Virus record (IMG/VR): IMGVR_UViG_3300027754_000034
Location: 186,001 to 250,000 of that record
Length of the DNA stretch: 64,000 nucleotides
Direction: 5' to 3' (one strand)
Both the position numbers and the translations under genes were made by a program. The number at the start of each line of letters is the position of its first letter. Position 1 is the first letter of the stretch. The notes beneath the pieces are model-generated. The model saw only the letters and a list, made by a program, of their open reading frames with translations. It was not told the origin of the DNA and did not search any database. Below, piece after piece: positions 9,233-57,853 of this stretch.

Positions 9233-10966
9233 ATGAAAATAAAATCAGGTGAAAAATATGGGGGTTTATTATACGAAGGGCCTGATTATGAAGGAAAGAC
9301 AAGGGATGTAATCGAATTAAAATGTAACTGTGGTAGATTAAAAAAAGTACGTATATATAATCTATTAAATGGATCTACCAAAAGATGTGGATTGTGTAAT
9401 TCTATTACCCTTAAAAAGGGTGATGTATTTGGTAAATTATCCTACTTAGGTCCTACCATTGAATTACCAAAAGGGTCTAAGCGTAAAATTGAGGTTAAAT
9501 GTGATTGTGGTCGTCATAAAGATATTAAGCTAGTAAATTTAATAAATGGACTTAGTACCTCTTGTAATGAGTGTAATCACATTTTACTTAAATCGGGTGA
9601 AAATTATGGAAAGATTAAATATATTGGTTCGGACATTTACATAGGTCGGTCCAGTCATAAAAAGTTATCATTTGAGTGTGAGTGCGGTCGTCTCCATATT
9701 ACTGAACTTCAGTATTTAAATGACACCTCCTCATGCGGCAAGTGTGCTAATGTTATTTTAGAAAATGGTGAAAAGTACGTTAATTTTAAATACTTCGGAG
9801 AGCGTATAGAAATTTCTCCATATAGTAATAAGAAATTATCATTTGAATGTCGTTGCGGCACTATTAAGAATATATCGGTTCAATATATTACTAAAAATCA
9901 AAAGTCGTGCGGAAGTTGCCGAAATCAAGTCTTTGGTTGGTATCAAAATAACGCAGATTTATTGAAAAATGGTGTTCCTATTGATGGTATGTTACCGATT
10001 GGGGGACCAATTGTTTTAGAAAAAATAAAGAATGCGAGTGTTCCATTTTTGGCGCAATGTTGTGTATGTGGTAAGCAGTATAATCCGAGATATAAGGACA
10101 TTAAGCGTGGTCTTTCGTTAACGTGTGGTTGCACTCAAAACAAAACATCTTCATACAGTCTATTAATTTCGGATTACTTAAGTTCCCTAAACATAATTCA
10201 TTTTTTAGAGTATAAAGTTAATGGTTATTTTTACGATGTTTATATACCTTCGGCGAATTTGCTAATAGAAATAAATGGACTCTATTGGCATTCCTCAACT
10301 TTAGTATCTAACCTTGATGCACTTAAATATAAAACCGCATGTGAAGGTAATTATGATTTTATGATGATATATGAAGATGAAATCATAAATAAGTTTAATC
10401 TAGTAAAAGCATTGGTATTTAACCGCATTAAGTCTAAATCTTTCGTCTCTTTAAGACCCTCTCAGTGTGTAATGAAAAGGGTAGATAATCATGGATTAAA
10501 GGAATTACTAAACAACCATCACTATTTAGGTACCTGTACATTTAAGATAGGGTATGGGGTATTTTATGAAGGAATGCTTATAGCAGGCATTACTTTTTCT
10601 AGACCCACCAGGCAATCATCCTATGATTGGGAACTGACTAGGATGGTTAGTGACTCTAAGTATAAAGTACATGGAATATGGAGTAAACTCTGTGGTTTAT
10701 TCATCAGGGAAATAAACCCAAAATCAATGGTTTCATTTTCTGATAATAGACTATTTTCTGGTTTAGTGTATTCGAAGATTGGCTTTAAATATGATGGTAA
10801 TGTTCGCCCTGATTATTATTGGGTAAAAGGGAAAAACAGGTACCATAAATCAAGGCTCAGGAAGAAAAAAGGAGAAGTAGGAACTGAAAATGAGTTAAGA
10901 ATTTCCCAAGGTTATAGAAAAATAATGGACCTTGGCAAGAAGCGTTGGATATTAAATGTAACTTAG
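9233..10966 (+). CDS. Zn-repeat + Vsr/DUF559-like endonuclease + GNAT (Mom-related) fusion, copy A; homing-endonuclease-like
   Basis: Four ~58-aa G..YG.L...CxCG...SCxxC repeats plus a partial fifth; DVYIP..NLLIEINGLYWH nuclease motif; HHYLG...WELTRM...VSFSDNR..GLVY..IGF GNAT-like tail. Confidence 0.7.
   Translation: MKIKSGEKYGGLLYEGPDYEGKTRDVIELKCNCGRLKKVRIYNLLNGSTKRCGLCNSITLKKGDVFGKLSYLGPTIELPKGSKRKIEVKCDCGRHKDIKLVNLINGLSTSCNECNHILLKSGENYGKIKYIGSDIYIGRSSHKKLSFECECGRLHITELQYLNDTSSCGKCANVILENGEKYVNFKYFGERIEISPYSNKKLSFECRCGTIKNISVQYITKNQKSCGSCRNQVFGWYQNNADLLKNGVPIDGMLPIGGPIVLEKIKNASVPFLAQCCVCGKQYNPRYKDIKRGLSLTCGCTQNKTSSYSLLISDYLSSLNIIHFLEYKVNGYFYDVYIPSANLLIEINGLYWHSSTLVSNLDALKYKTACEGNYDFMMIYEDEIINKFNLVKALVFNRIKSKSFVSLRPSQCVMKRVDNHGLKELLNNHHYLGTCTFKIGYGVFYEGMLIAGITFSRPTRQSSYDWELTRMVSDSKYKVHGIWSKLCGLFIREINPKSMVSFSDNRLFSGLVYSKIGFKYDGNVRPDYYWVKGKNRYHKSRLRKKKGEVGTENELRISQGYRKIMDLGKKRWILNVT
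10204..10246 (+). repeat. 43-bp direct repeat, copy 2 (coding, start of the nuclease domain)
   Basis: Encodes LEYKVNGYFYDVYI; 42/43 identical to 9132..9174. Confidence 0.95.
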
Positions 10967-10968
10967 AT

Positions 10969-11952
10969 ATGTCTTGCATTCGTTTTATTACATCCTCTGA
11001 TGAGCATGTTGCTGATTTAGCACCGGGTTTTAGGAAGGATGACTATAAAGCCAGTATTTTAAAGAAATTAGAATGGCAGGGAGAATTAGCTAAAAGAGCA
11101 TCTTCAGATGCTATTCTACGTGGTGGCGACCTTTTTCATGTTAAGGCTGCTAATAAAAACACGCACGCCACCATGCAAAGGGTAGCCGAGATACATAGAA
11201 AATATCCGTGTCCTACTTATGCTTTGGCCGGTAATCATGATATGTCTAATAATGATCCTGATTCAATATTGCGTCAACAGCCCCTGGGTGTACTAATCAA
11301 AACCGGGACATTATATGATTTAAAGGAGGAAACCTTCGTGTCTGGTTCTATGAAGGTTAGAGTAGTGGGTATTGAATATACAACAGATTTGGGAGTGGAA
11401 ACCATTCATGATGCAGTTAGAAAAAATGATGATGACGTATATACTGTCGCCGTGATTCATGCTTTGGCGTCCATGGCTCCTTCTGAGAAGATTCAATCAT
11501 TTTTTAACGAAACGATTTTTGACTATAGAGATTTAGTATTTCCTGGATGTCCAGACGTATATGTTTTCGGACATTATCATAAGGATCAAGGAATACTAAA
11601 CCATTGCGGTATTAACTTCGTAAATTTGGGTGCAATATCTAGAGGAGCGTTAACTTTCGAGAATTTAGAAAGAAAGCCTAAGGTATCTATGCTTACGTTT
11701 GATTCATCGGGAGTTTCATGTGAGGAGATAATAGTTCCACACGAAGATGCGAAGGATATTTTCGACTTAGATCTAAAACGGAGATTAGACGTGGAAAGAA
11801 AGGATCTGGATGACTTCATAAGTCGTTTAAAAAAAGATTCGTCAGTTTCGCATTCCCTAAAGAAGGAGGAACTAGATAGTTTTCCGAGTGATTTAAAAAG
11901 TTTGGCCTTGGAAGTGTTAGAAGCTGCGGAATCCGGAGTATTAGAGGACTGA
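10969..11952 (+). CDS. SbcD/Mre11-like metallophosphoesterase nuclease
   Basis: SSDEH, GGDLFH, AGNHD, VIH, GHYH motifs; ATG 10969 preferred over the overlapping track start 10945. Confidence 0.8.
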   Translation: MSCIRFITSSDEHVADLAPGFRKDDYKASILKKLEWQGELAKRASSDAILRGGDLFHVKAANKNTHATMQRVAEIHRKYPCPTYALAGNHDMSNNDPDSILRQQPLGVLIKTGTLYDLKEETFVSGSMKVRVVGIEYTTDLGVETIHDAVRKNDDDVYTVAVIHALASMAPSEKIQSFFNETIFDYRDLVFPGCPDVYVFGHYHKDQGILNHCGINFVNLGAISRGALTFENLERKPKVSMLTFDSSGVSCEEIIVPHEDAKDIFDLDLKRRLDVERKDLDDFISRLKKDSSVSHSLKKEELDSFPSDLKSLALEVLEAAESGVLED

Positions 11953-11953
11953 T

Positions 11954-12814
11954 ATGTATTATGATTTGAGTTTAAGCTATTCGGGTCGTAAAATTTATTT
12001 AAAATGTCCGAAGCAATATCAATTTAAGTACATTTTAAAGGACTCTGCCGTATTTGATACTAAAAATACCTTATTCGGTTCTATAATCGGAAAGTTATTT
12101 GAGTGGTTTTATGAAAAGCAGGTCTGGAAGAGTAGCAATCCTTCAGACTTACTTCTCAGTATGAAGGCTGAAGCTATTGAATTAGTCTATTTAAAAAATG
12201 ACTATTTTAAGGGCAGTGATAGTTCCTTAGAATTGCGAATAGAAAGCGACCTGATTAAGTATGTGCCTCTCGGCGTTGAAACGATCAAGAATCAAGGGTT
12301 ACTTACTACTAATAGTAAGTCTGAATTAGATTTAACCATATTTTATAAAACCAAAGATGACCTAGTTTTAAAAATAGTCGGAATAGCCGACTTTGTGCAT
12401 TACAATAATGCATCTGATATTTGGATAATGGATGGTAAAGCTTATAAACAAAGAGAAAAATATGTGGATGCGGATCAATTGATGTGGTATGCTACTTTAC
12501 ATTATTTAAAATATGGAGTGGCTCCATCCCGGATAGGATTTATTTATTGGTTACATCCTGAAAATCCAATTAGTTATATATCGTATGATTCGGATTCTAT
12601 GCGTCTCCTTCTTCAAGATACCATAAATACCTGTAAGGACATATTGAATAAGAAATTCGATGCTAGACCTTCGGGTGAATGTCACCGATGTGCCTATAAA
12701 CCGAAATGTGAGGAGGGGCTCTGGCATATTGCTAAACGTCGACATGAATCTGGTGGGCACTTAGAAAATTCGATTTTTGATTTTGAAGATGTAACTTCTT
12801 CTAAAGGAGACTGA
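11954..12814 (+). CDS. RecB/AddB/Cas4-like PD-(D/E)XK nuclease with Fe-S cysteines
   Basis: N-terminal CPKQY, GIADFV...IMDGK, QLMWYA, C-terminal CHRCAYKPKC. Confidence 0.8.
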   Translation: MYYDLSLSYSGRKIYLKCPKQYQFKYILKDSAVFDTKNTLFGSIIGKLFEWFYEKQVWKSSNPSDLLLSMKAEAIELVYLKNDYFKGSDSSLELRIESDLIKYVPLGVETIKNQGLLTTNSKSELDLTIFYKTKDDLVLKIVGIADFVHYNNASDIWIMDGKAYKQREKYVDADQLMWYATLHYLKYGVAPSRIGFIYWLHPENPISYISYDSDSMRLLLQDTINTCKDILNKKFDARPSGECHRCAYKPKCEEGLWHIAKRRHESGGHLENSIFDFEDVTSSKGD

Positions 12815-13092
12815 TGATTATGGAAGACATAGAGACCAGGTACAAGGAATATCTCTCGAAAAGAGAGAAGGTGATGCAGGCAAAGATTAAGATAGAGGCT
12901 GCTCTCGCAGAGCGGAAAAAGCAGCTTCGTGATACTATGGAGGAGTGTAAGAAATTAGGGCATAACCCCGATACTTTGTCTGAGGATTTAAAAAAGATGA
13001 AGGAAGTATTACTTACTAAATTAAGTATTTGTGAGTCGGATCTTGAAGCAGCTGAAGAGTCAATACTGCCGATGCTAAAAGAGATAGAATAA
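12814..13092 (+). CDS. Small coiled-coil protein
   Basis: 92 aa, heptad-like E/K/L-rich. Confidence 0.65.
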   Translation: MIMEDIETRYKEYLSKREKVMQAKIKIEAALAERKKQLRDTMEECKKLGHNPDTLSEDLKKMKEVLLTKLSICESDLEAAEESILPMLKEIE

Positions 13093-14201
13093 TGTCTATG
13101 TCTGCTAAATCTAAGGATTTAAAGTCCGGATTAAACTTAGCAAAAGTAGTAAAGCCTACTGATGGAGAATATAGAATTTCCATCTCAGGTGGTTCAATTG
13201 CTATCATCAGCAGTGACAAAAGAAGGTATCTATGTGCCTTTTTGACTACAAGGATGGGTGATGGGATTACTGAAGATTTCTTATTACCCCAGGACAGGTC
13301 TTCGATTTTCGAGGCAGACTTAGATGATGTTGATTTATCAATTAACGAAAAAGGACTTTCGCTAAAATATTCGGGAGGAGGCACTAAGAAGTCTGCAGTG
13401 ATAAAACGCAGATCTCCGTCGAAAAAGGGAGTGTTGGGAAAATCTATAATCATTGATGAAGAAGAATGGAGAATAGAATCTAATCTATTAGATGAACTTC
13501 TTACTGTAGCGTCGGCTTCTGCGTTAGTTCATGAAACTAAAACAGAAGAGGATATGAAAATGAATCAAATAATATTTGATTCGAAAAACAACTGTATCAT
13601 ATCGAATGCAAGATACTACGCAACTTTTGTTTTCCATCCGTCCATAAAGAAAGATATCTCAATTATCAGTGCTGATATACCAACAATCAGGGCATTCTGT
13701 AATAGATGTAAGGGTGATATATTAATATCCTGTGATAATGTAGGTTTATGTTTTAAACATCAAGAGACCGGGAGTTATCTTATTATCAATAAAATAAATA
13801 GTAAGCAGTCGAAAAATCCATCTGTTCCGGATGTTAGGGAATCTATCATAAATATTCAGTGTAGCACGGCACTTTTCAAAGATGCTATTAAATGGTCTGG
13901 CGTCACTTTAGAGGGAACGCAAAGAATTTCGATTCAGAGCGAAAATGATGGTGATTCGGAGGTCTTAAAGTTTTCTCAGTCTGATAGAGTGCTTACTTCG
14001 ATTCCGATTTTATCTAGTGGTAATACTTCTTTTTCTGCGGATTTACCCTTGAAGGTATTGGATAATATATCCTGTTATCTATTAGATGGAAATGTTGTTA
14101 TACGTCATGGATTAAAAGCATTTCCGGATGTTGTTATGTTCGAGCAGACTTTAGAAGACCTTAAGGTACAACATTTTGTAAGGAGTATGAGATCGAAATG
14201 A
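13092..14201 (+). CDS. Putative DNA sliding clamp (DnaN/beta-like)
   Basis: 369 aa (DnaN size); IISSDKRRY, ISNARYYAT and VPDV...FKDAIK resemble beta-clamp repeats; clamp-loader genes nearby. Confidence 0.45.
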   Translation: MSMSAKSKDLKSGLNLAKVVKPTDGEYRISISGGSIAIISSDKRRYLCAFLTTRMGDGITEDFLLPQDRSSIFEADLDDVDLSINEKGLSLKYSGGGTKKSAVIKRRSPSKKGVLGKSIIIDEEEWRIESNLLDELLTVASASALVHETKTEEDMKMNQIIFDSKNNCIISNARYYATFVFHPSIKKDISIISADIPTIRAFCNRCKGDILISCDNVGLCFKHQETGSYLIINKINSKQSKNPSVPDVRESIINIQCSTALFKDAIKWSGVTLEGTQRISIQSENDGDSEVLKFSQSDRVLTSIPILSSGNTSFSADLPLKVLDNISCYLLDGNVVIRHGLKAFPDVVMFEQTLEDLKVQHFVRSMRSK

Positions 14202-14833
14202 ATGCGGTATCAGTGCTTGAATCCAAATTTCACAATATTTCACGAAAATTGGATAAGTTAAATGCTTATCAGAGTTTACTCAGTAATAGGCTCGCGAAAG
14301 CTAGTATTGAGTCTCAGGATCATAAATATAAATCCGAGTTATATCTAAAATGTTCGACAATATTTAAGAGATGGTTAGAGGATTCAATTGAAAGAAATGT
14401 AGAATCTATTTCAGAATTAACGACTACTGGATTGAATTACATCATACACGACCAGCCCTTAAAATTCTTAATTAAGCAAGAGCAAAAAAATAATCGTATA
14501 TCCATGAAATTCGCCTTAGAACAGGATGGGTTCGAGGGAGACCCTCTTTGTTCATACGGCGGAGGGGCTGCAGTGGTAATATCATTAATTTTACGTTTAT
14601 CTATAATGCAAAGATTGGGACTTGGCAACTTATTAATATTGGATGAATCGATGGTGGCATTAGCGAACACATATGTACCGAATGCTGCATCATTCATTAG
14701 ACAACTATCGGAAAAGACGGGCGTAAATATATTGATGGTCACTCATAATCCTGAGTTTTTAAATGGTGCCCACACAGCCTATGAGGGTTTTAAGTCAGAT
14801 TCATTGCACCTGAAATGTATAGTTAATACATAA
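14198..14833 (+). CDS. SbcC/Rad50-like ABC ATPase, C-terminal half only
   Basis: Coiled coil, SYGGG signature, LLILDES Walker B, MVTH H-loop; no Walker A. Confidence 0.75.
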   Translation: MNAVSVLESKFHNISRKLDKLNAYQSLLSNRLAKASIESQDHKYKSELYLKCSTIFKRWLEDSIERNVESISELTTTGLNYIIHDQPLKFLIKQEQKNNRISMKFALEQDGFEGDPLCSYGGGAAVVISLILRLSIMQRLGLGNLLILDESMVALANTYVPNAASFIRQLSEKTGVNILMVTHNPEFLNGAHTAYEGFKSDSLHLKCIVNT

Positions 14834-14834
14834 A

Positions 14835-15326
14835 GTGAAAACGCAAATAGAAATAGAACGCCGATTGATTAAACTAACTAATCGGCATAAGAAAAGACAT
14901 TTGGGCGCAAATTTGTCTAAATTACCAGAAAACTGTAAATATAATTACTTACATGAACCAAACACGTTAGAGTACAATTCTTCTTTAGATGATTCCGATG
15001 TCGTAAAAATTTCTGAAGATAAACCCGTACGGATTTGCATGTATGGATCCGAAAATCCGGCAAAATGGAATGGTGATATATGTGATACTAAAGAGGTATC
15101 ATCGGGGTGTGGATATTTTTGCCCGAAAAAGAGCGCAGATCAATTGTCTGCTGAATTTAATGAAATGATTACGGATGATGGGTATACTATTGAAAATTAT
15201 TCAGATGTGGCTGCTTTGCAATGGGTGGTGAATGATAGAACCGTAAATTTGAAAAATCACTCTTTCTTCGTATATTATGTGTTATTAGTGTATTCTAAAT
15301 TATGTATGTTTTTTAAAAGTGTTTAA
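14835..15326 (+). CDS. Hypothetical Cys-containing protein
   Basis: 163-aa ORF, GTG start. Confidence 0.6.
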   Translation: MKTQIEIERRLIKLTNRHKKRHLGANLSKLPENCKYNYLHEPNTLEYNSSLDDSDVVKISEDKPVRICMYGSENPAKWNGDICDTKEVSSGCGYFCPKKSADQLSAEFNEMITDDGYTIENYSDVAALQWVVNDRTVNLKNHSFFVYYVLLVYSKLCMFFKSV

Positions 15327-15328
15327 CT

Positions 15329-15916
15329 ATGTCATGGTTACATAAAATATTGGATCATGACCTTCATAAAACGAAGGTGGGCATGAACTCCAGGGTCCTT
15401 CTCATAGAGACCCCGGGAAAAAAAGAATTTCTTCCATGTGTTGTTAGCACTGCGGATAAAGGAAGATTTCTAATTAATAATTCTATTACCAAGGAAGGTC
15501 GAATTAGGTCTGGAGTATTCGAAGGAGCTGAAGAGTCGTTGGATGTAATTATTCCTCCTTTGTTTACGAAGGCATATGAATTATCTATCCAGAAGGAATA
15601 TTCGAATATTTTTAGTGATTCCCAGAGTTGTCTGTCTTATATAAAGGATAAGAGTGGGTTTAAAAAGGTCCCCGGTATGTGTTTTATTCCATTCTCATGG
15701 TCAGATGTGAATCTTAAAAGGGTTTTTCCGGGGTTATCGTTAGAAGACGGGATGATTAACGGTTATTGTAAATTCTTAAAAATTGAAATGGAATTTGCTG
15801 TGTTTTTATCTAGACCTGATTTTGTGGGCCTATACACTAGACTACCGAATAATCAGAATAGTGTAATTCTACATAATGTTGAATTTGGTCTCGCGTTTTT
15901 AACACTTAATGTCTGA
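15329..15916 (+). CDS. Hypothetical protein
   Basis: 195-aa ORF in the operon. Confidence 0.6.
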   Translation: MSWLHKILDHDLHKTKVGMNSRVLLIETPGKKEFLPCVVSTADKGRFLINNSITKEGRIRSGVFEGAEESLDVIIPPLFTKAYELSIQKEYSNIFSDSQSCLSYIKDKSGFKKVPGMCFIPFSWSDVNLKRVFPGLSLEDGMINGYCKFLKIEMEFAVFLSRPDFVGLYTRLPNNQNSVILHNVEFGLAFLTLNV

Positions 15917-44306: not shown

Positions 44307-44342
44307 ATTAAGCCCCGGTCCTTGATTGGATCGGGGCTTAAT
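44307..44342 (+). terminator. Rho-independent terminator after MCP
   Basis: attaagccccggtcc-ttgatt-ggatcggggcttaat then tgtttt. Confidence 0.8.
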
Positions 44343-44390: not shown

Positions 44391-45893
44391 ATGATGTGCA
44401 GAATATGCAATGCTGTTAGCCAGCACGATCTTTGCAATGTATGTCGTCAGGATACTAACTACTTAGTAAAATACCCAGTATTAAAGAATATCCTTACAGA
44501 TTCAGCCTTAGAGGTCTTGGATTTTAATCCCTCGCGCTCTGACTTTCAACGAGTAGACGTTATATGTGGTGAATGCAAGAGTACTAATAATATAGATTTA
44601 GTTAGCATCCTTAAATATATAAGACGTCATCTAAAAAAGAATCCCTATAACATATATAAGTGTCATTCATGTTCTAAAAGAGGGGAATCTCTCATTAGTC
44701 TCAAAGAGGTGATGCCGATCATAGATATGAAACTCACACAGGAAAAACATGGTGGAATAGGTAAAAATGTAAAAAAGTCCCTTGTTGTGGTCAAATGCGA
44801 GGATTGTTATGAACTATCAGACATTAAGTTAAGTAGTTTACTGCATGGGGCTAGAAGGCATCAGAAGCTAGGTCGAAAGTGTATTTACAAGTGTTTTAAG
44901 TGTGGTGTTCTATTGCCGGATGCCATAAAGAAGTCCAATGATGCCAGAGCTAAGCAGTTAGCTGTAGGAGCCCGTTCTCATATCGAAGTCGCTTTAGCCA
45001 ATAGATTAAAGGCTTTGAATATAGAATATGAGGAGTAGTTTCGTACCGATATGTATGTTTGGGACTTTTACCTCCCTAAGTATTTATTATTAATAGATGT
45101 AAATGGAGAATACTGGTATGGACTATCTCGGAATAAATCAAAAGATAAGTCTAAACTGACTTATGTAGAAAATTATCTACCTGAATATAAAACCCTAATC
45201 ATAGAGGAAAAGCGTTTTCTAAACCCCTTGATGGTAGATAAAATAATTAAGGACGCCATAGGAGAATCTAAGAAGATTACGGTAGAAGAGTTTAGCTTAT
45301 TGGATGTGATCATTAATCAGTCCTCAAAGGTATCTAAGTCCAAAAGGTCTACGGAATCTGATTTTTTAAACTCTTATCATTACTCAGGATTTGGTCGGAA
45401 CGGGAAATTAGTAATTACGGCACATCTTAATGAATCATTGGTGGCACTTTGTAAATTTAGTGGTACGACTCGACAAGGCACTGCTAAGTCTTTGGGTTAT
45501 AAATGTTATGAAGTCCTGGAACTTGACAGATTCTGCATACATCCTTCTTATCATAAAAAGAACTTCGCTTCTTGGTTTTTGTCACGATGTATGAAATTAG
45601 TATTTGAATCGAATAAACTTATGCAATGTTTGGTATCATTCGCAGATCCCACATATGGTCATACCGGCACTATTTATAAAGCCACAAATTGGGAAATGAA
45701 AGGCAAAACCAATCCAAGTTACCATTATATGGATCACTTAGGGGTTCCAGTCAATAAGAAGAGGATTTATGACTTTGCACAAAAACTTCGGATGAAGGAA
45801 GCTGAATATGTTGAACTTCATGGACTACAGAAGTTCTCTGAATTACCCAAGATTAAATATGTTTACAAGCGTTTTTCATCCGGGTCTAGATAG
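44391..45893 (+). pseudogene. Zn-ribbon repeats + degenerate endonuclease + Mom-like GNAT fusion, copy B, split by an in-frame TAG at 45036..45038
   Basis: ORFs 44391..45038 and 45051..45893 are in the same frame; YEE*FRTDMYVWDFYLP aligns to YKEQYVVGPYIFDFYLP of copy C. Confidence 0.75.
45051..45893 (+). CDS. Mom-family GNAT DNA modification protein (possible independent restart)
   Basis: YHYSG, LELDRFC, SWFLSR, VSFADPTYGHTGTIYKATNW match the Mu Mom family pattern. Confidence 0.7.
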   Translation: MYVWDFYLPKYLLLIDVNGEYWYGLSRNKSKDKSKLTYVENYLPEYKTLIIEEKRFLNPLMVDKIIKDAIGESKKITVEEFSLLDVIINQSSKVSKSKRSTESDFLNSYHYSGFGRNGKLVITAHLNESLVALCKFSGTTRQGTAKSLGYKCYEVLELDRFCIHPSYHKKNFASWFLSRCMKLVFESNKLMQCLVSFADPTYGHTGTIYKATNWEMKGKTNPSYHYMDHLGVPVNKKRIYDFAQKLRMKEAEYVELHGLQKFSELPKIKYVYKRFSSGSR

Positions 45894-50047: not shown

Positions 50048-50061
50048 ATGTACATTTTCCC

Positions 50062-50277: not shown

Positions 50278-50280
50278 ATC

Positions 50281-51332: not shown

Positions 51333-51908
51333 TTACATTACCAATTCAGAAATTTTCTCTATACTGGTATGATCGGGAATCGCTAATCCTCGTTCTAAGT
51401 AATTTTTGATTCCTTCTAATGAATATTCTATCTTATGATCATCATACCACTCTGGTTTTTTAGTGCCTTTATTCCACTTGGCAAATAATTTTTCTCCTTT
51501 ATAATAAGACCGATATGCTACGATTGTGCCTTCATTCCGGTATATAAGAGGCATTACTTGTGGTGGTTTAGTGAATGATGATTCTCCCCATTGAATTCTA
51601 CTCATGTCATTTGATACCCTGTTTAACACAGATAAGCAGGCATGTGTTTTATGGAATCTTTTCGTATACTCTCTTGATATTTCATAGGCATGGGTTAATA
51701 ACCAAGAAAAGTTCCCTTCAGATTTCACTGTCCACCTAGAGCATGGGTGATTTTTCATCAGCAATCTATAAGGCGGGTCTGTTAATTTAAATATGTGATA
51801 TGCATTAGAAAGCATTTGGGCTGATTCTAGCAGCATCTTTGGAATATGTTTATCACATAAATTCTGAGCTGCAATATTTGGATCAAAATCAGTAAAGAAT
51901 ACGTTCAT
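51333..51908 (-). CDS. Pyrimidine-dimer DNA glycosylase/endonuclease V-like protein
   Basis: MNVFF..DP..AAQ..CDKHIPKM.LESAQML...NHPC..W pattern. Confidence 0.7.
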   Translation of the reverse strand: MNVFFTDFDPNIAAQNLCDKHIPKMLLESAQMLSNAYHIFKLTDPPYRLLMKNHPCSRWTVKSEGNFSWLLTHAYEISREYTKRFHKTHACLSVLNRVSNDMSRIQWGESSFTKPPQVMPLIYRNEGTIVAYRSYYKGEKLFAKWNKGTKKPEWYDDHKIEYSLEGIKNYLERGLAIPDHTSIEKISELVM

Positions 51909-51927
51909 TTAAAATATTACATTTTTG

Positions 51928-52464
51928 TTATCTTTTAACGTTTTTAGGAAGTTCCACTAGGTTCTTCCTCCTAAAGGGTAATACCCTATTCCCATCAATT
52001 TCTGTGGGATTTTCCAGTTCCTCCAATTTAGATTGTAAATCCATAGATAGTGTTCTATAATATATAATATATGATATTAATACTAATCCGAGAGATGTGA
52101 TAGCTGCTATCATTAATCGTTCATCTGTAATTCTCGGGAATAAATGTGGATGCTTTTCGGGATTTAATTCGTTTAATAGTCCCTTAGTTAATAGGATTCC
52201 CAACCCTATTCCGGATAAAGAATTGGTTAAAAACGAAATGGCCTTATTCAATGCTTTTTGATTCTTTGATGCAGCTTTCGGGATTGGAATTCCTTTATCA
52301 ACCAAACCTTTATATATTGTAGACGGAGAACTGGATAACTCTATGTTTTTTACGATAAATTCATCCAGTGTAGTAAGTGCTTTATCATTCAATGAATTTA
52401 ATAAATTATCTGCAATATTTTTTACATCAGAGTCATTAATATAGAGAGTCACTAACTTATCCAT
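51928..52464 (-). CDS. Membrane protein with two hydrophobic segments
   Basis: LSGIGLGILL and LMIAAITSLGLVLISYIIYY. Confidence 0.55.
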   Translation of the reverse strand: MDKLVTLYINDSDVKNIADNLLNSLNDKALTTLDEFIVKNIELSSSPSTIYKGLVDKGIPIPKAASKNQKALNKAISFLTNSLSGIGLGILLTKGLLNELNPEKHPHLFPRITDERLMIAAITSLGLVLISYIIYYRTLSMDLQSKLEELENPTEIDGNRVLPFRRKNLVELPKNVKR

Positions 52465-52491
52465 AATCGAATTAATTATTACAAGGTTATT

Positions 52492-53049
52492 TCATGAGAA
52501 TCTACTTGACACCATTCCCCAATCTATATATGGTTTTAAGGCAGTTAAATAACCATTCTTGTCGGTTCCCCAATCCATCCAGTATGCATGTTCCCAAACA
52601 TCAATGACACACAAAGGATTATATCCAAATGCTGCTCCTTCATCATGAGAATTCATGGCGAAAATGCGGAGATTTTTCGAGCCTGGATCTTGTGCTAAAA
52701 CGGCCCATCCCCGACAAGATAGACCCGTCGATTTCATTTGTTCATACAAATTATCCAGAGACCCCCAATGTTCTAGTACATGTTCTACAAACGCACTTTC
52801 GGGCGGTTTTGGTTCCAGAGACAGATTGCTAAAATAAAGAGAATGGAGGTCTGCTCCTCCTACAGCATATCCATGATTACGCAATGACTTGGCTATGTTC
52901 CCGTCTAGGGCATTTTTATTTAGTGAATGTATTGATTTTAGCTCTAAATCTGCTTTCTCAAGCATCTTAATGTAACCATCAAATAACTTTAAATGTTCGC
53001 TTAAAGCTCTCGAAGATGTGGCTCCCGGAAGTTCCGAATATCCTATCAT
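52492..53049 (-). CDS. sod: Fe/Mn superoxide dismutase
   Basis: Metal ligands EHL, LHSLY, DVWEHAY. Confidence 0.88.
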   Translation of the reverse strand: MIGYSELPGATSSRALSEHLKLFDGYIKMLEKADLELKSIHSLNKNALDGNIAKSLRNHGYAVGGADLHSLYFSNLSLEPKPPESAFVEHVLEHWGSLDNLYEQMKSTGLSCRGWAVLAQDPGSKNLRIFAMNSHDEGAAFGYNPLCVIDVWEHAYWMDWGTDKNGYLTALKPYIDWGMVSSRFS

Positions 53050-53072
53050 ATATTTATTGCATCATTAACCGT

Positions 53073-54989
53073 TCATTCTTGTAGTTCTGGATTTGGTACT
53101 TCAGGTTCATCGATTAAATCGGGTTCTGATTGGCCTATTACTACCCATTCATTCAACCCGTTTTTTTCTTCTTCCTCTGTGATGAATTTTAACTTTTTCA
53201 GATTATTCATTACTAAATGGATGAACTTCATTTTAGAATCGGTGACTCTTCCGATTTTATCCCATGATACTGATTTAGGATTTGGAAGCAAAGAAGCCAG
53301 AAGTATGCATTGCGTGAGAGATAAACTGGCCGGGTTCGTATTGAAATATTTCTTGGCTGCGTTCCCGATTCCATATTCACCGGGAGAAAACTCTACTATG
53401 TTTAGATATGTTTCCATAATTTCGTTCTTGGATAATATCTGTTCCAAATGAACAGTAAAAAATGCCTCTTGAATTTTACGTGCCATGGTTTTCTTTCTAT
53501 TCAGCCACAAGTTTTTCGCAGTCTGCATTGAAATCGTGCTACCTCCTCTAATGAATTTATGGGCTTTGATATTTTCAACCATTGAATTCTCGATTGCATT
53601 AATCAGTATGCCTTTATGCTTCATGAATGCTGAATCCTCGGTTCCCATAACAGAAATCGGCATATATTGTGAAATGTTAGAAAGACTAACCCAGTTTGGT
53701 GTTTGTGGACCTGTGACTTCTTCTATTTCTTCTCCTTTACTGTTTATTACTATTCGAGAATACTTGGACATTAGTACATTTCGTGAGTATTTTTTGGGAG
53801 AGCTCACCGAATGGCAGTTATGATTTAGTTTTATACTAACTTGGGGATTTTTGGTTAGTAACGATGTACTGCCAGATATTTGTCCAGCGAATATGAATTC
53901 ATCTAAATTGTCCTTCATGCTGTCTGGCAAGGCTTCTATCAGTGCTTGACATTCGGTTGTATCAAGCACTGTTTTGATTTCAAGGTCTTCACCATTCTTC
54001 TTTAGAATTCCGGAAATGTGGACTTCCCCAATCTTTAGATCGTAATCAAAAGTATCATCTATTTTAGATAGAAATATTTCAACACCGCGTATTTTTATAT
54101 TTGACTTACTTAACTTCTCATTAGACCCATAGATGTAGCTAGATTTAAGAAACATCTTATTGTTCTTTATTTCTATGTTAACGCCTTCCATGTTCGTAAT
54201 TTCTTCTTGATGCTGACTGATTTGAATTGATTCGCAATTCATTGTATGCGACTTATAGTCGCCACTGATGGCATTTATGGAATAACTGTTATATTTAGCT
54301 TTAATCGATTTAAAAGAAAAAGATGGTACTGATTCTAACTGGTTATATATTTTGAGAATGTAGGACTCCATATCTGCTTCCTTTTTATTTTTAGAGTCTC
54401 GGGGTTCGATCTTCCTATCATCCTGATGCTTCAGCTCAAATGATATGTTTCCTAGTGATATCCTTCCGTCTTCATATGCTCCTTTGTCTATTGTAAACGC
54501 ATTATCTCCCTTTACCAAAGACGCATTTGTAAATTTCACATATTTCTCTCCATTCATGTATGATGCCTCTGCAATATCTAACCTAACGTCATACCCGTGG
54601 GATTTAATGTTGGTTCTAATATTATTTAGGTGTAATTCATAAACGCTTCTATGGCTGTCGTATGAATTCTTATTATCCTGGATATGTGTATAGTTTACAT
54701 ACCCATCATTTGCTTTTATTATGTACTGTTCCGGATATACGTAATTAATGTTCAGTGACCGGAAGTTTATGTCTTGGTTTTCCTTAAATATGTGTACCTC
54801 ATGACAGTCAGCACCCATCCACCTCATGCTGCATTCTTGTACTTGAACTGAGTACCCTTTAGATTCTAACTTTTCTATAATTTTGTTTTTTACATATGTT
54901 GGTAAGTATGTAATCGTTGCTGAAAGAATCAAAAATACCATAAAGGAGATTTTGAATTTTAGGTTTTTTATAATTGGAAAAGCATTCAT
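53073..54989 (-). CDS. Monofunctional peptidoglycan glycosyltransferase (GT51) with N-terminal TM anchor and large extension
   Basis: All five GT51 motifs: EDSAFMKHKG, GGSTISMQTAK, RKIQE, KNEIMETYLN, LASLLPNP; ATG 54989 preferred to avoid overlap. Confidence 0.88.
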   Translation of the reverse strand: MNAFPIIKNLKFKISFMVFLILSATITYLPTYVKNKIIEKLESKGYSVQVQECSMRWMGADCHEVHIFKENQDINFRSLNINYVYPEQYIIKANDGYVNYTHIQDNKNSYDSHRSVYELHLNNIRTNIKSHGYDVRLDIAEASYMNGEKYVKFTNASLVKGDNAFTIDKGAYEDGRISLGNISFELKHQDDRKIEPRDSKNKKEADMESYILKIYNQLESVPSFSFKSIKAKYNSYSINAISGDYKSHTMNCESIQISQHQEEITNMEGVNIEIKNNKMFLKSSYIYGSNEKLSKSNIKIRGVEIFLSKIDDTFDYDLKIGEVHISGILKKNGEDLEIKTVLDTTECQALIEALPDSMKDNLDEFIFAGQISGSTSLLTKNPQVSIKLNHNCHSVSSPKKYSRNVLMSKYSRIVINSKGEEIEEVTGPQTPNWVSLSNISQYMPISVMGTEDSAFMKHKGILINAIENSMVENIKAHKFIRGGSTISMQTAKNLWLNRKKTMARKIQEAFFTVHLEQILSKNEIMETYLNIVEFSPGEYGIGNAAKKYFNTNPASLSLTQCILLASLLPNPKSVSWDKIGRVTDSKMKFIHLVMNNLKKLKFITEEEEKNGLNEWVVIGQSEPDLIDEPEVPNPELQE

Positions 54990-55016
54990 GTCGTAGTGTT
55001 TTCTGGAGGTTTTGAA

Positions 55017-56003
55017 ATGAGCACTATGTCTTGGAAACGGGGAAATTACATCAAATTCTTTGCTAAGATGAAAATCCGGGTGGGTGGCGGGACCCCGATA
55101 GATATTCAAAGTGGTGATGAATTTGATTATGATGGTTCGATTTTAAGGTACTCAGGTATGGATATCCCATCACCTCAATTAAGAGGGGCAGTAGAAAACG
55201 GTTGGGTAGTACCCGCCAGTTTAGAAGAATCTGGTGACAGGATAGATACCATACGACCCAATCGTAACATAGCAAAAGCCCAAACTGTAAACAAGGACTT
55301 GAGCCGCGTTCAGCGAGCGTCTGGTGCACAATTAACCACTACTACTTTAGACGAAGATGAGGTTCTCAAAGTAGAAGATAGAGGATCCTCCAATAAAAAG
55401 AATCCTAAAGTATTGGTAGGTACAGATAACCGTAAATCCAGGGGAATGGCCGTGTCTAGTGATACGACTGATGCTCAGGAAGCTGTATCAATTGGCAGGG
55501 TTCGCACTAGTGCCAAGGCTGTTTTTAATGACGTTTCGCGTCCTGACTCAATAAAAATAATGCAAGAATTGGAAAATATGAGCGGCGTTAAAGCCGACTT
55601 ATTTAAAGATTCGGTAATTCAAAGAGAAGGGATTACCATTACCACCAATTTAGGTAAAATGAACTCTGTTAGAGAAGCTGATGATGAATCTGGGACAGTG
55701 ATTGCTCAGGTCAGAAATTCTTCCAAGGGATCTTTTGAAGGCATTTCTGTTAAGGACACTAGTGGTATTAGGAATAAGAAGCCCGGCGCTCCTAAGATTT
55801 CTGACCCTCGCTTAAGGGTAGCTCGCGCCATTGATCCTAGCTTCCCCATGGATTGGGCTTTTACTGGTAAGCTCGCTGAACGTTTAGAAAACATTAAGCG
55901 TCATGGGGCTACCGCAGAATTTTTGGAAGCTCTGTATGCGGCAGAGGGTGATCAGATGAGAAAGACGTTGGTCAAGGAATTCCCTGATCAATTTGAAGGA
56001 TGA
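55017..56003 (+). CDS. Putative virion structural protein
   Basis: GGAGG RBS at 55005..55009 supports ATG 55017. Confidence 0.6.
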   Translation: MSTMSWKRGNYIKFFAKMKIRVGGGTPIDIQSGDEFDYDGSILRYSGMDIPSPQLRGAVENGWVVPASLEESGDRIDTIRPNRNIAKAQTVNKDLSRVQRASGAQLTTTTLDEDEVLKVEDRGSSNKKNPKVLVGTDNRKSRGMAVSSDTTDAQEAVSIGRVRTSAKAVFNDVSRPDSIKIMQELENMSGVKADLFKDSVIQREGITITTNLGKMNSVREADDESGTVIAQVRNSSKGSFEGISVKDTSGIRNKKPGAPKISDPRLRVARAIDPSFPMDWAFTGKLAERLENIKRHGATAEFLEALYAAEGDQMRKTLVKEFPDQFEG

Positions 56004-56091
56004 CTTGACTTGATCGAATAAGAATCATGGAGAAGCCCTTAATGGTTACTCCCTGATTCTTATTTGAGGTTATAATTAGAAATATTAATAT

Positions 56092-56421
56092 ATGTCGGCT
56101 ACTATTTACATACAAGAAGAATTGTCTGACGCTAGATTACGTTGTAATGAGTTAAAAAATTATATAGTTAAAGTATTTGACTTAGTTAATGCAAGCGAAA
56201 AGAAGGATCACTTCTACGCAGTAGCTGGCGATTTGATAGAGTCAATACCGAGTACACTTTTGAAATTAGAAAAATCTCTAGACGCCACAGCATTAGCAGT
56301 TAATAAGATAGATTATGAAGAGCTGCGCATGACTCTGCGCCCTGAGAAAGTAGATGAATTAGAAAGAGTACTTGAGGATGTAAGATTGAGAATTCCTCGA
56401 AGGACTGGCCGATTATTTTGA
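56092..56421 (+). CDS. Hypothetical helical protein
   Basis: 109-aa ORF. Confidence 0.6.
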   Translation: MSATIYIQEELSDARLRCNELKNYIVKVFDLVNASEKKDHFYAVAGDLIESIPSTLLKLEKSLDATALAVNKIDYEELRMTLRPEKVDELERVLEDVRLRIPRRTGRLF

Positions 56422-56422
56422 A

Positions 56423-57853
56423 ATGAATGGAGAAAAACTAGCTAAATATTTAGCTACGTTAGAGCCTGGGTATACGAATAAATCCAGAATAACTTATACT
56501 TGTGAGATGTGTGGTATTCAAAATCACATTATTTTAAAATGCTTTAAAGAAAAAATATCTAAGGGCTCGTTATATTGTAAGAAGTGTTCACTGAAGCAGA
56601 AATGGCAAGATGAAGAATATCGATCTAAAATAAAGAAAAGTCAAGAAATAATATGGAATGAAACTGATACGAAAAATAAAATATCGGAAAAAAGCAAGAA
56701 ATTGTGGCAAGATCCCGAATACAAATCTGCTCAGTTAAAAATTCACTCCGACCCCGAATATCTAAAATCAGCTAGAGAACATTCAATAGACAATTGGAAG
56801 AGTGTAGAATTCAGAGAAAACCAACTGAAAACTCGAAATACTCCTGATTTTAAAGCAAAACAGTCACAATCAATGCGTGATTTATGGAATTCTAACAAAT
56901 ATGTAGAAAAAACCCTTCTGTCCTTATCAAAAAAATTCAGTAGTGACTTTAAATCATCGTTAGAGATCATAACATCTAATATTTTAACTGCTCTTAGTAT
57001 TTCATATAAAGAGCAGTATGTAGTAGGACCCTATATTTTTGATTTTTATCTTCCCGATTTTAAAGTATATATTGAATGTCAAGGAGAGTATTGGCATTCA
57101 TTAGAATCTGCTGTTAAGCGTGATGCGAGTAAATCTACTTATCTAAGGAAGGCTCATTCTGATAGTAAGTTTTTGTACTTAAATGAGGTAGATTTCTGCA
57201 ATCCTACTTTAATCAAGCAAAAAATTATTAGTATTTGTGGTTCGACTGCCATAACACAGGTTAAGTCGTTCGAATTAAAAAGTGTAGATATTAAGTTAAT
57301 TAAAAAGGATGATCGGGATTTTAATTTAGCACATAACTTGTTAACTAGTTTTCATTATGCGGGTTTTGGTAGAGCTGCTAAGGTAATATTTGGAGCATAT
57401 AAGGATAAGGAGCTCATAGCCGTATGTAAGTTTTCACCGCCAATAAGACAGGAAGTGGCCACCTCTTTAGGCATTAGTCCTAAAAATATGCTTGAGCTTG
57501 ATAGGTTCTGTATAAAACCAGATAGGCAAATAAAGAATTTTGCTAGTTGGTTTTTATCGAGAGCAGCTAAACTCATTTTTAGTATAGATTCTTCAAAATC
57601 TCACTTGGTGTCTTTTGCTGATAGCACTTACAATCACTTAGGAACTATTTATAAAGCAGCCAATTGGGCGTATGTTGGTGTTGTTTCCCCTGATTATTAC
57701 TACGTTAATGGTCAGGGCTGGATATTACACAAAAAGACATTATATAATCAAGCTGTAAGAAATAAAATGAGGGAGTCTGATTATGCTGAAAAGCATCATT
57801 ATGTAAAAATATACGGAAAAGAAAAATATAAATTTATTCTTGCTAAGTCTTGA
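56423..57853 (+). CDS. Zn ribbon/helical repeats + Vsr/DUF559-like endonuclease + Mom-like GNAT fusion, copy C (intact)
   Basis: CEMC..CKKC; W.D.EY helical repeats; DFYLPDFKVYIECQGEYWH; FHYAG, LELDRFC, VSFADSTYNHLGTIYKAANW. Confidence 0.78.
   Translation: MNGEKLAKYLATLEPGYTNKSRITYTCEMCGIQNHIILKCFKEKISKGSLYCKKCSLKQKWQDEEYRSKIKKSQEIIWNETDTKNKISEKSKKLWQDPEYKSAQLKIHSDPEYLKSAREHSIDNWKSVEFRENQLKTRNTPDFKAKQSQSMRDLWNSNKYVEKTLLSLSKKFSSDFKSSLEIITSNILTALSISYKEQYVVGPYIFDFYLPDFKVYIECQGEYWHSLESAVKRDASKSTYLRKAHSDSKFLYLNEVDFCNPTLIKQKIISICGSTAITQVKSFELKSVDIKLIKKDDRDFNLAHNLLTSFHYAGFGRAAKVIFGAYKDKELIAVCKFSPPIRQEVATSLGISPKNMLELDRFCIKPDRQIKNFASWFLSRAAKLIFSIDSSKSHLVSFADSTYNHLGTIYKAANWAYVGVVSPDYYYVNGQGWILHKKTLYNQAVRNKMRESDYAEKHHYVKIYGKEKYKFILAKS

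What the first reader, a model, noticed from the sequence alone, without database searches (positions are those of the whole stretch)
9233..57853. Three-copy family of endonuclease-Mom(GNAT) fusion genes with swappable DNA-binding N-termini: a candidate one-gene 'cut-and-modify' selfish or anti-defence system
Seen: three dispersed genes (9233..10966, 44391..45893, 56423..57853) share a core of a Vsr/DUF559-like PD-(D/E)XK nuclease (D[VF]Y[IL]P....I[ED].[NQ]G.YW[HY]) followed by a GNAT domain. In copies B and C that domain carries the Mu Mom signature (HY.G ... ELDRFC ... SWFLSR ... SFAD.TY.H.GTIYKA.NW). Each copy has a different N-terminus: A has four CxC...CxxC repeats, B has tandem treble-clef-like CxxC repeats, C has a Zn ribbon plus W.D.EY helices. 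Each sits between conserved core genes (after recD2, after the MCP terminator, within virion genes). Established: Mom is a GNAT-fold adenine hypermodifier that protects Mu DNA from restriction, and free-standing homing endonucleases occupy such sites. Inference: a single polypeptide that targets by a modular reader, cuts or nicks unmodified rival or host DNA and marks its own DNA. That would be a one-gene R-M-like or homing element whose specificity is diversified by N-terminal domain swapping.
Basis: partly seen in the sequence, partly recalled or inferred. Interest (0 to 1): 0.85.

Follow-up and report, generated by a model that had tools for sequence, protein, structure and literature searches.

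The report
Hef-type homing endonucleases with Mom domain
Three dispersed genes in this huge-phage genome, one of them broken, are mobile "Hef-type" homing endonuclease genes that carry a well-conserved Mom-like DNA-modifying domain; this gene type, and the cut-and-modify idea for it, are already in the literature, so these are new members of a known kind.

Summary
Copies A (9233-10966) and C (56423-57853) are intact. Copy B is split by an in-frame TAG at 45036-45038.

All three share the same core. It has a Vsr-like nuclease of the EDxHD homing-endonuclease family (closest structure I-Bth0305I, PDB 3r3p). This is followed by a Mom-type GNAT domain (closest structure Mu Mom, PDB 8bv8). N-terminal zinc-ribbon or helical arrays precede the core.

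The genes behave as mobile elements:
- Each sits at an intergenic site that is empty in some related phages.
- Two of the three sites hold LAGLIDADG-type genes in other relatives.
- B-type genes are scattered over the capsid-gene tree.
- Copy B is decaying: CAG to TAG at an invariant Gln, and the catalytic His changed to Tyr.
- At least one more paralogue lies on the same 257-kb contig, and two fossils lie in the window.

This is the family annotated as "Hef-like homing endonuclease". Taylor 2011 placed Hef in the EDxHD family. Iyer 2021 described jumbo-phage Mom-nuclease fusions and proposed cut-and-modify.

Mom catalytic residues are almost invariant in about 200 fusion proteins, so the domain is probably enzymatic. 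Its role is untested. N-terminal types are clade-specific, not freely swapped.

Verdict: new members of a known kind, moderate interest.

The parts
9233..10966 (+). Copy A, intact 577-aa Hef-type gene. It has four Zn-ribbon repeats (about 9233-9928), a further Cys cluster, an EDxHD nuclease (about 10130-10432) and a Mom-type GNAT domain (about 10445-10963).
   Evidence: ORF. It matches phrog_559 at 4e-68 and phrog_3339 at 8e-53. The AF2 model has pLDDT 91.5. Foldseek finds 8bv8 at E 5e-6 and 3r3p at TM 0.78-0.79. Family invariants are D335, H353, D362, K365, H430, Y431, R470, D504, R506 and Y513.
44391..45038 (+). Copy B, N-terminal fragment (215 aa). It holds CxxC zinc-finger modules and the first helix of the nuclease, and it ends at the premature TAG.
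   Evidence: Orthologues in nine related contigs (L003, L018, L021, L042, L045, L048, L052, L054, L063) read through this point as one ORF.
45036..45038 (+). In-frame TAG nonsense codon inside the nuclease domain of copy B, at a position where every B-type relative has Gln (CAG or CAA).
   Evidence: The window has no tRNA. TAG ends 9 other long + strand frames, and this is the only TAG-split pair.
45051..45893 (+). Copy B, C-terminal fragment (280 aa). It holds the rest of the nuclease (about 45051-45275) and an apparently intact Mom-type domain (about 45333-45890). The ATG at 45051 is an ancestral internal Met.
   Evidence: Pfam Mom scores 2e-19. It is 40% identical to copy C. The Mom catalytic positions are all retained.
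45117..45119 (+). TAT (Tyr) codon replacing the catalytic His of the nuclease. This is the equivalent of H213 in I-Bth0305I and H225 in copy C.
   Evidence: All 16 B-type relatives have His at this position. The aligned relatives have CAT. H213 is the putative general base (PMC3239194).
56423..57853 (+). Copy C, intact 476-aa Hef-type gene. It has a Zn ribbon plus a helical repeat array (56423-56947), an EDxHD nuclease (56948-57238) and a Mom-type GNAT domain (57308-57850). Its start lies 1 nt after the stop of the upstream gene.
   Evidence: ORF. Pfam Mom scores 1e-23. The AF2 model has pLDDT 93.3 and pTM 0.75. Foldseek finds 8bv8 at E 7e-11 and 3r3p at TM 0.79, rmsd 2.6. Invariants are D207, H225, K237, H311, Y312, R361, D400 and Y410; E181, E218, D234 and S375 are nearly invariant.
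44307..44342 (+). Terminator-like hairpin (15-bp stem) after the capsid gene. Homology with relatives that lack the gene ends just downstream of it.
   Evidence: The blastn breakpoints lie 66-71 nt after the capsid-gene stop.
9132..9174 (+). 43-nt copy (42/43 identical) of 10204-10246, which lies inside the nuclease-coding part of copy A. This copy sits in the intergenic spacer upstream of copy A. It is probably a recombination or decay scar.
   Evidence: It is absent from the orthologous loci L099 and L102.
6085..6183 (+). Fossil of the last 33 codons of an A-type gene, with stop codons upstream in the same frame.
   Evidence: tblastn gives 54.5% identity to A residues 544-576, E 2e-5.

Best explanation
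The three loci are free-standing homing endonuclease genes of the Hef / EDxHD (Vsr-like) family, living as selfish mobile genes in a huge-phage genome. The window is about positions 180,001-244,000 of a 257-kb metagenomic contig.

Each protein has three parts:
- an N-terminal array of zinc ribbons or short helices, which most likely reads a long DNA site (inferred);
- a Vsr-fold nuclease with the family's Asp/His/Asp catalytic set, which cuts an allele lacking the gene, so that repair copies the gene in (inferred from the family);
- a C-terminal Mom-type GNAT domain.

Shown here:
- the domain identities;
- conservation of the catalytic residues of both enzymes across the family;
- presence/absence at fixed intergenic sites in relatives, and replacement by other endonuclease genes in some;
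- decay of copy B, where the nuclease is hit twice and the Mom part is still intact.

Inferred: the Mom domain is an active transferase that modifies adenine in DNA. It probably uses an aminoacyl-tRNA like Mu Mom rather than acyl-CoA. It either shields the carrier genome's own target sites from the linked nuclease, or shields phage DNA from host restriction. I put that role at about 0.3-0.4. I put the homing-endonuclease identity at about 0.85.
For: Nuclease:
- Its closest solved relative is the I-Bth0305I catalytic domain, by sequence and by fold for both A and C.
- Taylor 2011 states that Hef-type phage endonucleases belong to this EDxHD family.
- The equivalents of D196, H213 and D222 are D207, H225 and D234 in C and D335, H353 and D362 in A. 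Each is kept in 90% or more of the aligned relatives (D207 and H225 in C, and D335 in A, in every row).

Mom domain:
- Pfam PF25680 hits and a phmmer hit to 8bv8.
- 8bv8 is the top Foldseek match for both models.
- The equivalents of H58, Y59, E108, R111, D149 and Y159 are conserved in essentially all of about 200 fusion proteins. S124 is conserved in the B and C types.
- A two-helix insertion sits where Mu Mom has its essential helix-turn-helix-like insertion.

Mobility:
- A B-type gene is present in 10 of 44 capsid loci with enough downstream DNA. This needs at least 8 changes on the capsid-gene tree (5 forced by well-supported branches), no fewer than label shuffling gives.
- The recD2|phosphoesterase junction is empty (gap under about 130 nt) in at least 12 relatives and holds A-type genes in two.
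- The site of C is empty in L114. In L113 and L115 it holds ORFs with the LAGLIDADG-type LLGDGS/LLGDAS motif plus Cys-rich tails.
- Copy B carries two inactivating C-to-T changes.
- Fossils lie at 6085-6183 and 9132-9174.

Family context:
- Cultured-phage homologues are annotated as Hef-like homing endonucleases, with 9-11 copies per Campylobacter phage genome.
- A Hef-like gene sits between the gp24 and gp23 capsid genes in an Acinetobacter T4-like phage.
- 386 clusters at 50% identity match copy C at E <= 1e-30.
Against: - No cleavage, homing or modification has been measured for these proteins, and their targets are unknown.
- Copies B and C (and their clades) have Thr where Mu Mom has R151, which is essential in Mu.
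- Copy A has Leu at the first Glu of EDxHD, which is only 58% conserved in its clade. Its S124 equivalent depends on the aligner.
- Cultured-phage Hef-like proteins have Y59 changed to Leu and D149 changed to Asn, and they get no Pfam Mom hit. The domain can therefore persist without the full catalytic set.
- The region after the capsid gene is a variable island, not a clean insertion with two conserved flanks.
- Relatives are too diverged (capsid-gene DNA 84% or less) to see co-conversion tracts or target-site polymorphisms.
Confidence: 0.75

Rival explanations
1. The Mom-like domain is not an enzyme here. It is a DNA-binding, base-flipping or dimerising module that helps the nuclease find or clamp its site. 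The proteins are then plain homing endonucleases with no modification step.
For: - Mu Mom is a tight dimer with a positively charged DNA cleft and a helix-turn-helix-like insertion.
- I-Bth0305I works as a homodimer.
- R151, essential in Mu, is Thr in the B and C clades.
- Cultured Hef-like proteins lack Y59 and D149 yet keep the domain.
Against: - The equivalents of H58, Y59, E108, R111, S124, D149 and Y159 are almost invariant in about 200 proteins that are only 35-45% identical overall. This is the pattern of a working active site.
- The A clade also keeps R151 in 68 of 68 proteins.
- W48, which Mu needs for dimerisation, is not conserved.
Confidence: 0.25
2. The genes are a phage-encoded one-polypeptide restriction-modification weapon. 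The nuclease attacks host or co-infecting phage DNA in general, and momylation protects the phage's own genome. This is the reading of Iyer et al. 2021, and homing is not the point.
For: - It is a published proposal for jumbo-phage Mom-nuclease fusions, with five in phage PA5oct.
- This genome holds several divergent copies.
- Both active sites are conserved.
Against: - Occupancy is site-specific and patchy, at intergenic sites that other homing endonuclease genes also use.
- Long modular N-terminal arrays suggest long, rare targets.
- The nuclease family's characterised members are homing enzymes.
- Copy B is lost without replacement.
Confidence: 0.2
3. Copy B is not broken. Its TAG is read as glutamine (stop-codon recoding, as in some large phages), so all three genes are intact.
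For: - The TAG lies exactly at a codon that is Gln in every relative.
- Recoding of TAG is known in some large phages (my own knowledge, not tested here).
Against: - No suppressor tRNA, or any tRNA, lies in the 64-kb window.
- This is the only TAG-split gene pair in the window.
- TAG ends 9 other long + strand frames, including copy B itself.
- CAG to TAG is a single transition, and a second transition removes the catalytic His 27 codons downstream.
Confidence: 0.07

Closest known systems
Hef (phage U5) and 'Hef-like homing endonucleases' of T4-like, Campylobacter, Tenacibaculum and jumbo phages
   Same: - The nuclease + GNAT-like core aligns end to end.
- They are free-standing genes between conserved genes, including next to capsid genes.
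- Genomes carry many copies.
- PHROG families 559 and 3339 cover copy A almost fully.
- BFVD full-length structural matches include CP21 and PA5oct 'homing endonuclease'.
   Different: - Identity is only 22-27%.
- The two cultured examples checked have Y59 changed to Leu and D149 changed to Asn, and get no Pfam Mom hit. The window's copies keep the Mom catalytic set.
- The N-terminal arrays differ.
- The original Hef paper (Sandegren 2005) was not available to read.
I-Bth0305I, prototype of the EDxHD (Vsr-like) homing endonuclease family (PDB 3r3p)
   Same: - Same catalytic fold: TM 0.78-0.79, rmsd about 2.5 A, 26-27% identity.
- Same Asp/His/Asp set.
- A separate DNA-binding region lies N-terminal of the nuclease.
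   Different: - I-Bth0305I is intron-encoded, has NUMOD/HTH motifs and has no C-terminal GNAT domain.
- The window genes are free-standing and carry Zn-ribbon or helical arrays and a Mom domain.
Mom of phage Mu (PDB 8bv8; PF25680)
   Same: - Best structural match for the C-terminal domain of A and C.
- Shares the H58, Y59, E108, R111, S124, D149 and Y159 equivalents and a helical insertion.
- Shares the (K/R)N..S loop in place of the usual GNAT CoA-binding R/Q-x-x-G-x-G/A motif (the motif is from my own knowledge).
   Different: - Mu Mom is a stand-alone 231-aa late protein under Com control, with no nuclease.
- The R151 equivalent is Thr in B and C.
- The insertion is about 11 residues shorter.
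- The dimer residue W48 is not conserved.
Mom-REase fusions of jumbo phages described by Iyer, Anantharaman, Krishnan, Burroughs and Aravind 2021 (PMC7824862)
   Same: - Same architecture, same type of host genome (huge or jumbo phage) and multiple copies per genome.
- Same proposed logic: momylation protects, the nuclease attacks.
   Different: That paper treats them as restriction-like conflict systems and gives no evidence on mobility. Here the comparative data point to homing-type behaviour.
T4 Seg and Mob free-standing homing endonucleases
   Same: They are free-standing genes inserted between conserved phage genes, patchy among relatives and prone to decay (family knowledge; for their distribution).
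   Different: Their catalytic folds are unrelated (GIY-YIG, HNH) and they have no modification domain.

Membership tests
EDxHD (Vsr-like) / Hef-type homing endonucleases | Catalytic domain with the Vsr-like fold of I-Bth0305I | tested here: met
   phmmer to 3r3p gives E 0.013. Foldseek gives TM 0.79, rmsd 2.6 for C and TM 0.78-0.79, rmsd 2.5 for A. B was not modelled, but it is 40% identical to C.
EDxHD (Vsr-like) / Hef-type homing endonucleases | Catalytic residues E170, D196, (N208), H213 and D222 of I-Bth0305I | tested here: inconclusive
   C has all of them: E181, D207, Q220, H225, D234. A has D335, N348, H353 and D362, but Leu at the first Glu, which is 33/57 conserved in its clade and which the paper calls only a possible participant. 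B has lost the His (Tyr) and is cut by a stop.
EDxHD (Vsr-like) / Hef-type homing endonucleases | Mobile: present or absent at the same site among related genomes | tested here: met
   Site B is occupied in 10 of 44 loci, needing at least 8 changes on the capsid-gene tree. Site A is empty in at least 12 relatives and occupied in 2. Site C is empty in 1 relative and holds ORFs with LAGLIDADG-type motifs in 2.
EDxHD (Vsr-like) / Hef-type homing endonucleases | Site-specific double-strand cleavage of the gene-less allele, and gene conversion | not testable with these tools
   This needs purified protein and target DNA. The targets are unknown.
Mom family (PF25680) of GNAT-fold DNA adenine modifiers | Pfam PF25680 above the gathering score | tested here: inconclusive
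   C scores 84.5 bits and the B fragment 70.4 bits, against a cut-off of 27.1. A scores 23.9 bits, below the cut-off. Many A-clade homologues carry precomputed PF25680 hits.
Mom family (PF25680) of GNAT-fold DNA adenine modifiers | GNAT fold with the Mom-specific helical insertion near the C-terminus | tested here: met
   8bv8 is the top PDB match for C (E 7e-11, TM 0.64-0.67) and for A (E 5e-6). Helices 437-446 and 451-457 in C, and 539-542 and 552-558 in A, sit between the last strands. The insertion is described.
Mom family (PF25680) of GNAT-fold DNA adenine modifiers | Residues needed for Mu Mom activity: H58, Y59, R111, S124, D149, R151, Y159 | tested here: inconclusive
   H58, Y59, R111, D149 and Y159 are present in A, B and C. 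S124 is present in B and C; in A it depends on the aligner. R151 is present in A (68 of 68 in its clade) but is Thr in B and C, with a co-varying His three residues on.
Mom family (PF25680) of GNAT-fold DNA adenine modifiers | Transfers glycine from Gly-tRNA(Gly) to N6 of adenine in dsDNA | not testable with these tools
   The activity is defined in PMC13219725.
Restriction-modification-like one-polypeptide system | The modification made by the protein blocks cleavage by its own nuclease | not testable with these tools
   This is only an inference, published for the jumbo-phage fusions. No PADLOC defence model matches except a generic 'HEase' model.

The most novel reading that the evidence does not exclude
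The Mom domain gives the homing endonuclease a modification-based immunity. While the gene is resident, the protein marks an adenine inside its own recognition site on the carrier genome. The linked nuclease then cuts only unmarked, gene-less rival genomes during co-infection. The carrier needs no protective sequence change at the target. This would be a third way for a homing element to avoid self-cleavage, besides target disruption and target polymorphism. Copy B would then show the next step: the nuclease is lost while the modifier is kept.
Probability: 0.3. Interest if true: 0.7.

Novelty: new member of a known kind. Interest (0 to 1): 0.35.

Why it matters
The family is large: 386 clusters at 50% identity match copy C at E <= 1e-30. 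It is routinely annotated only as 'homing endonuclease' or 'hypothetical'. No one has shown what its Mom-like half does. The chemistry of Mu Mom was solved in 2026 (Gly-tRNA-dependent adenine modification), so the question is now directly testable. Copies A and C are good candidates, because they keep nearly the whole Mom catalytic set, unlike the cultured-phage Hef-like proteins checked here. If the domain does modify the nuclease's own target, that would be a new immunity logic for selfish nucleases and a source of programmable 'write-and-cut' enzymes. If it does not, these are ordinary selfish genes in a phage genome.

Tried and rejected
- DNA-level search of copy A in the phage collection found no match. 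NCBIfam found nothing. PADLOC gave only a generic homing-endonuclease model.
- TAG-to-Gln recoding for copy B was considered and judged unlikely.
- The original Hef paper (Sandegren 2005) and Iyer 2009 could not be read. What is said about Hef's activity therefore rests on secondary citations.
- I tried to find clean insertion junctions for copy B by aligning loci with and without the gene. Homology stops 66-71 nt after the capsid-gene stop and does not resume nearby, so the site is a variable island and no target sequence could be derived.
- I considered that LAGLIDADG + methyltransferase-like ORFs at the same post-capsid site in relatives are an independent 'nuclease + modifier' convergence. 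The methyltransferase-like gene also occurs there without the LAGLIDADG part, and in one locus alongside a Hef-type gene. It may therefore be a resident gene that endonucleases have invaded, and I do not use it as support.
- I tested 'swappable N-termini' on domain trees. N-terminal type changes the minimum possible number of times on the separate nuclease and Mom trees. The A and B types are single clades on the core tree. More distant relatives do pair the core with other N-termini, namely DUF7487 and the P0104 type. The sampling is biased, because homologues were collected with full-length queries.

Full report
**What is there**

ORF listing confirms copy A (9233-10966, 577 aa) and copy C (56423-57853, 476 aa) as single ORFs.

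The three share a C-terminal core of about 300 residues. C versus the B fragment is 40% identical (E 7e-65). A versus C is 29% identical (E 1e-17). They are therefore old paralogues or separate acquisitions, not recent duplicates.

**Where the window comes from**

The window matches IMG/VR contig 3300027754_000034 (257,205 bp) with an offset of 180,000. Its capsid protein is 77% identical to that of a 485-kb uncultured phage and 38% to that of Bacillus phage G. This is a huge phage.

**Domain identities**

Sequence searches:
- Pfam finds Mom (PF25680) in C (1e-23) and in the B fragment (2e-19). In A it falls below the cut-off (3.7e-5). C also gets weak DUF559/MTES_1575/Vsr hits.
- PHROGs places A almost end to end in families labelled 'HNH endonuclease' (phrog_559, 4e-68) and 'homing endonuclease' (phrog_3339). 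All three also hit 'Mom-like DNA modification protein'.
- By sequence, the only PDB hit for the nuclease part is I-Bth0305I (3r3p), and for the GNAT part it is Mu Mom (8bv8).

Structure predictions:
- AlphaFold models built on 57-58 homologues are confident: C has pLDDT 93.3 and A has 91.5.
- Foldseek against the PDB puts 8bv8 first for both models.
- It finds 3r3p for the nuclease at TM 0.78-0.79 and rmsd about 2.5 A.
- Against viral models, the full-length matches include 'homing endonuclease' of Campylobacter phage CP21 and of Pseudomonas phage PA5oct.

**Active sites: nuclease**

I-Bth0305I defines the EDxHD family with E170, D196, N208, H213 and D222.
- Copy C has E181, D207, Q220, H225 and D234.
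- Copy A has D335, N348, H353 and D362, but Leu at the first Glu. That position is only 58% conserved in its clade.
- These positions are invariant or nearly so across the collected homologues.

**Active sites: Mom**

Silva et al. 2026 showed three things:
- Mu Mom transfers glycine from Gly-tRNA(Gly) to adenine N6.
- R111, S124 and R151 are essential, and H58, Y59, D149 and Y159 are important.
- A helix-turn-helix-like insertion is required.

In about 200 fusion proteins, the equivalents of H58, Y59, E108, R111, D149 and Y159 are essentially invariant. The S124 equivalent is Ser or Thr in the B and C types. In A its placement depends on the aligner. R151 is Arg in all 68 A-type proteins but Thr in the B and C types, with a co-varying His three residues later. 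A two-helix insertion is present in both models. The pattern is that of a working active site in two flavours, not of a relic.

**Mobility**

Site B, after the capsid gene:
- Of 44 related capsid loci with at least 1.7 kb of downstream DNA, 10 carry a B-type gene directly after the capsid-gene terminator.
- On the capsid-gene DNA tree, presence changes at least 8 times (5 forced by well-supported branches). This is no more clustered than shuffled labels, which average 9.2 changes.
- The DNA after the terminator hairpin (44307-44342) is a variable island. Homology between loci with and without the gene stops 66-71 nt after the capsid-gene stop.

Site A:
- At least 12 relatives have the RecD2 helicase gene and the metallophosphoesterase gene adjacent.
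- Two relatives (L099, L102) have A-type genes at 41% identity. Others hold unrelated inserts.

Site C:
- L114 is empty.
- L113 and L115 hold ORFs with the LAGLIDADG-type LLGDGS/LLGDAS motif plus Cys-rich tails.

**Copy B is decaying**

All nine related B-type genes read straight through where the window has TAG. Each has Gln there. At the DNA level the window has TAG against CAG or CAA. Twenty-seven codons later the catalytic His is Tyr in the window (TAT against CAT), while 16 of 16 B-type relatives have His.

Recoding of TAG is unlikely:
- The window has no tRNA.
- There is no other TAG-split gene.
- TAG is used as an ordinary stop, including by copy B itself.

The Mom part of B keeps every catalytic position and begins after an ancestral in-frame ATG. 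Whether it is still made is unknown.

**More copies and fossils**

- P0061 (632 aa) is encoded at about 44.6 kb on the same contig.
- P0104 (507 aa) is listed with the same longest contig.
- The last 33 codons of an A-type gene survive at 6085-6183.
- A 43-nt segment of copy A's nuclease-coding region is repeated (42/43) in the spacer upstream of copy A.

**N-termini**

- On trees of the nuclease domain and of the Mom domain, N-terminal type changes the minimum number of times.
- On the core tree, the A type is one clade (support 100). The B type is one clade (support 94), nested among C-type proteins.
- More distant relatives pair the same core with other N-termini: DUF7487, a P0104 type, and Zn_ribbon_8 in Campylobacter.
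- The core has therefore acquired new N-termini several times, but rarely. 'Modular' is fair; 'swappable' overstates it.
- The sample is biased, because it was gathered with full-length queries.

**Comparison with what is known**

- tblastn finds the nuclease+GNAT core in 284 phage records, 89 of them with at least 80% coverage. They are annotated as 'Hef-like homing endonuclease', 'homing endonuclease' or 'nuclease/acetyltransferase', with 9-11 copies in Campylobacter phages.
- GenBank notes tie these to Hef of phage U5. Secondary sources describe Hef as having endonuclease activity with cleavage sites near its own locus.
- Taylor 2011 put Hef-type enzymes in the EDxHD family.
- Iyer et al. 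[quoted passage not shown] They proposed that momylation protects phage DNA while the nuclease attacks other DNA, and they noted five such enzymes in PA5oct.
- Both the architecture and the cut-and-modify idea are therefore published.

What this window adds:
- comparative evidence that the fusions behave as homing-type mobile genes;
- a caught-in-the-act decay of one nuclease;
- the observation that these copies keep the Mom catalytic set, whereas the two cultured Hef-like proteins I checked have Y59 changed to Leu and D149 changed to Asn, with no Pfam Mom hit.

**Verdict**

These are real features, correctly read at the domain level. They are new members of a known family. The mechanism of the nuclease half is well grounded by homology. 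The role of the Mom half is open. My estimates are self-protective modification about 0.3, a structural or dimerising module about 0.25, and general anti-restriction or restriction-like use about 0.2. Nothing here was tested at the bench.

Noticed in passing
window 9132-9174 and 10204-10246: A 43-nt direct repeat, 42/43 identical. One copy lies in the spacer between the RecD2 gene and copy A. The other lies inside copy A, where it encodes the strand with the catalytic Asp335. It is absent from the orthologous loci L099 and L102. It may be a repair or recombination scar.
   Followed up: partly
window 6085-6183: Fossil of the last 33 codons of an A-type nuclease-Mom gene (54.5% identity, E 2e-5), with stop codons upstream. 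It lies in the 390-nt spacer before ORF 6197-6682.
   Followed up: partly
L030 7087-9399; L060 7162-9477; L001 (LR745208.1) 9080-12766; also L014, L023, L024, L065: In relatives, the same post-capsid site holds large ORFs that combine a LAGLIDADG_2 endonuclease domain with a SAM-methyltransferase-like domain (Cons_hypoth95 / N6_N4_Mtase, SPPY motif) and zinc fingers. The methyltransferase-like part also occurs there without LAGLIDADG, and in L048 it occurs alongside a Hef-type gene. It may be a resident gene that has been invaded, rather than a second 'nuclease + modifier' design.
   Followed up: partly
L113 4928-5920; L115 5044-5981; L114 about 5973-5992: The site of copy C is occupied in two relatives by ORFs with the LAGLIDADG-type LLGDGS/LLGDAS motif plus Cys-rich tails; the L115 one is split in two. 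The site is empty in a third relative.
   Followed up: yes
L091 4462-5601; L100 3628-4701; L093; L086: The RecD2 helicase gene of several relatives is interrupted by inserts of about 1.1-1.3 kb. These encode intein-like or LAGLIDADG-like proteins in frame with the helicase. The window's RecD2 gene is uninterrupted.
   Followed up: no
L117 901-2325 (Acinetobacter phage fHyAci03); L118 517-2337 (Campylobacter phage NCTC12673 gp059): Cultured-phage Hef-like proteins align across both domains, but they have Leu for Mom Y59 and Asn for D149, and they get no Pfam Mom hit. The Acinetobacter gene sits between the gp24 and gp23 capsid genes, a similar niche to copy B.
   Followed up: partly
L119 3001-4899 (same contig as the window, about 44.6 kb): A fourth paralogue (P0061, 632 aa) has a much longer W..PEYR helical repeat array than copy C. 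Repeat number varies widely within the C-type clade.
   Followed up: no
window 45030-45053: The two Glu codons just before the premature TAG read GAGGAG, 15 nt upstream of the internal ATG at 45051. This could serve as a weak ribosome-binding site for a stand-alone Mom fragment. The spacing is long, and this is speculation.
   Followed up: no
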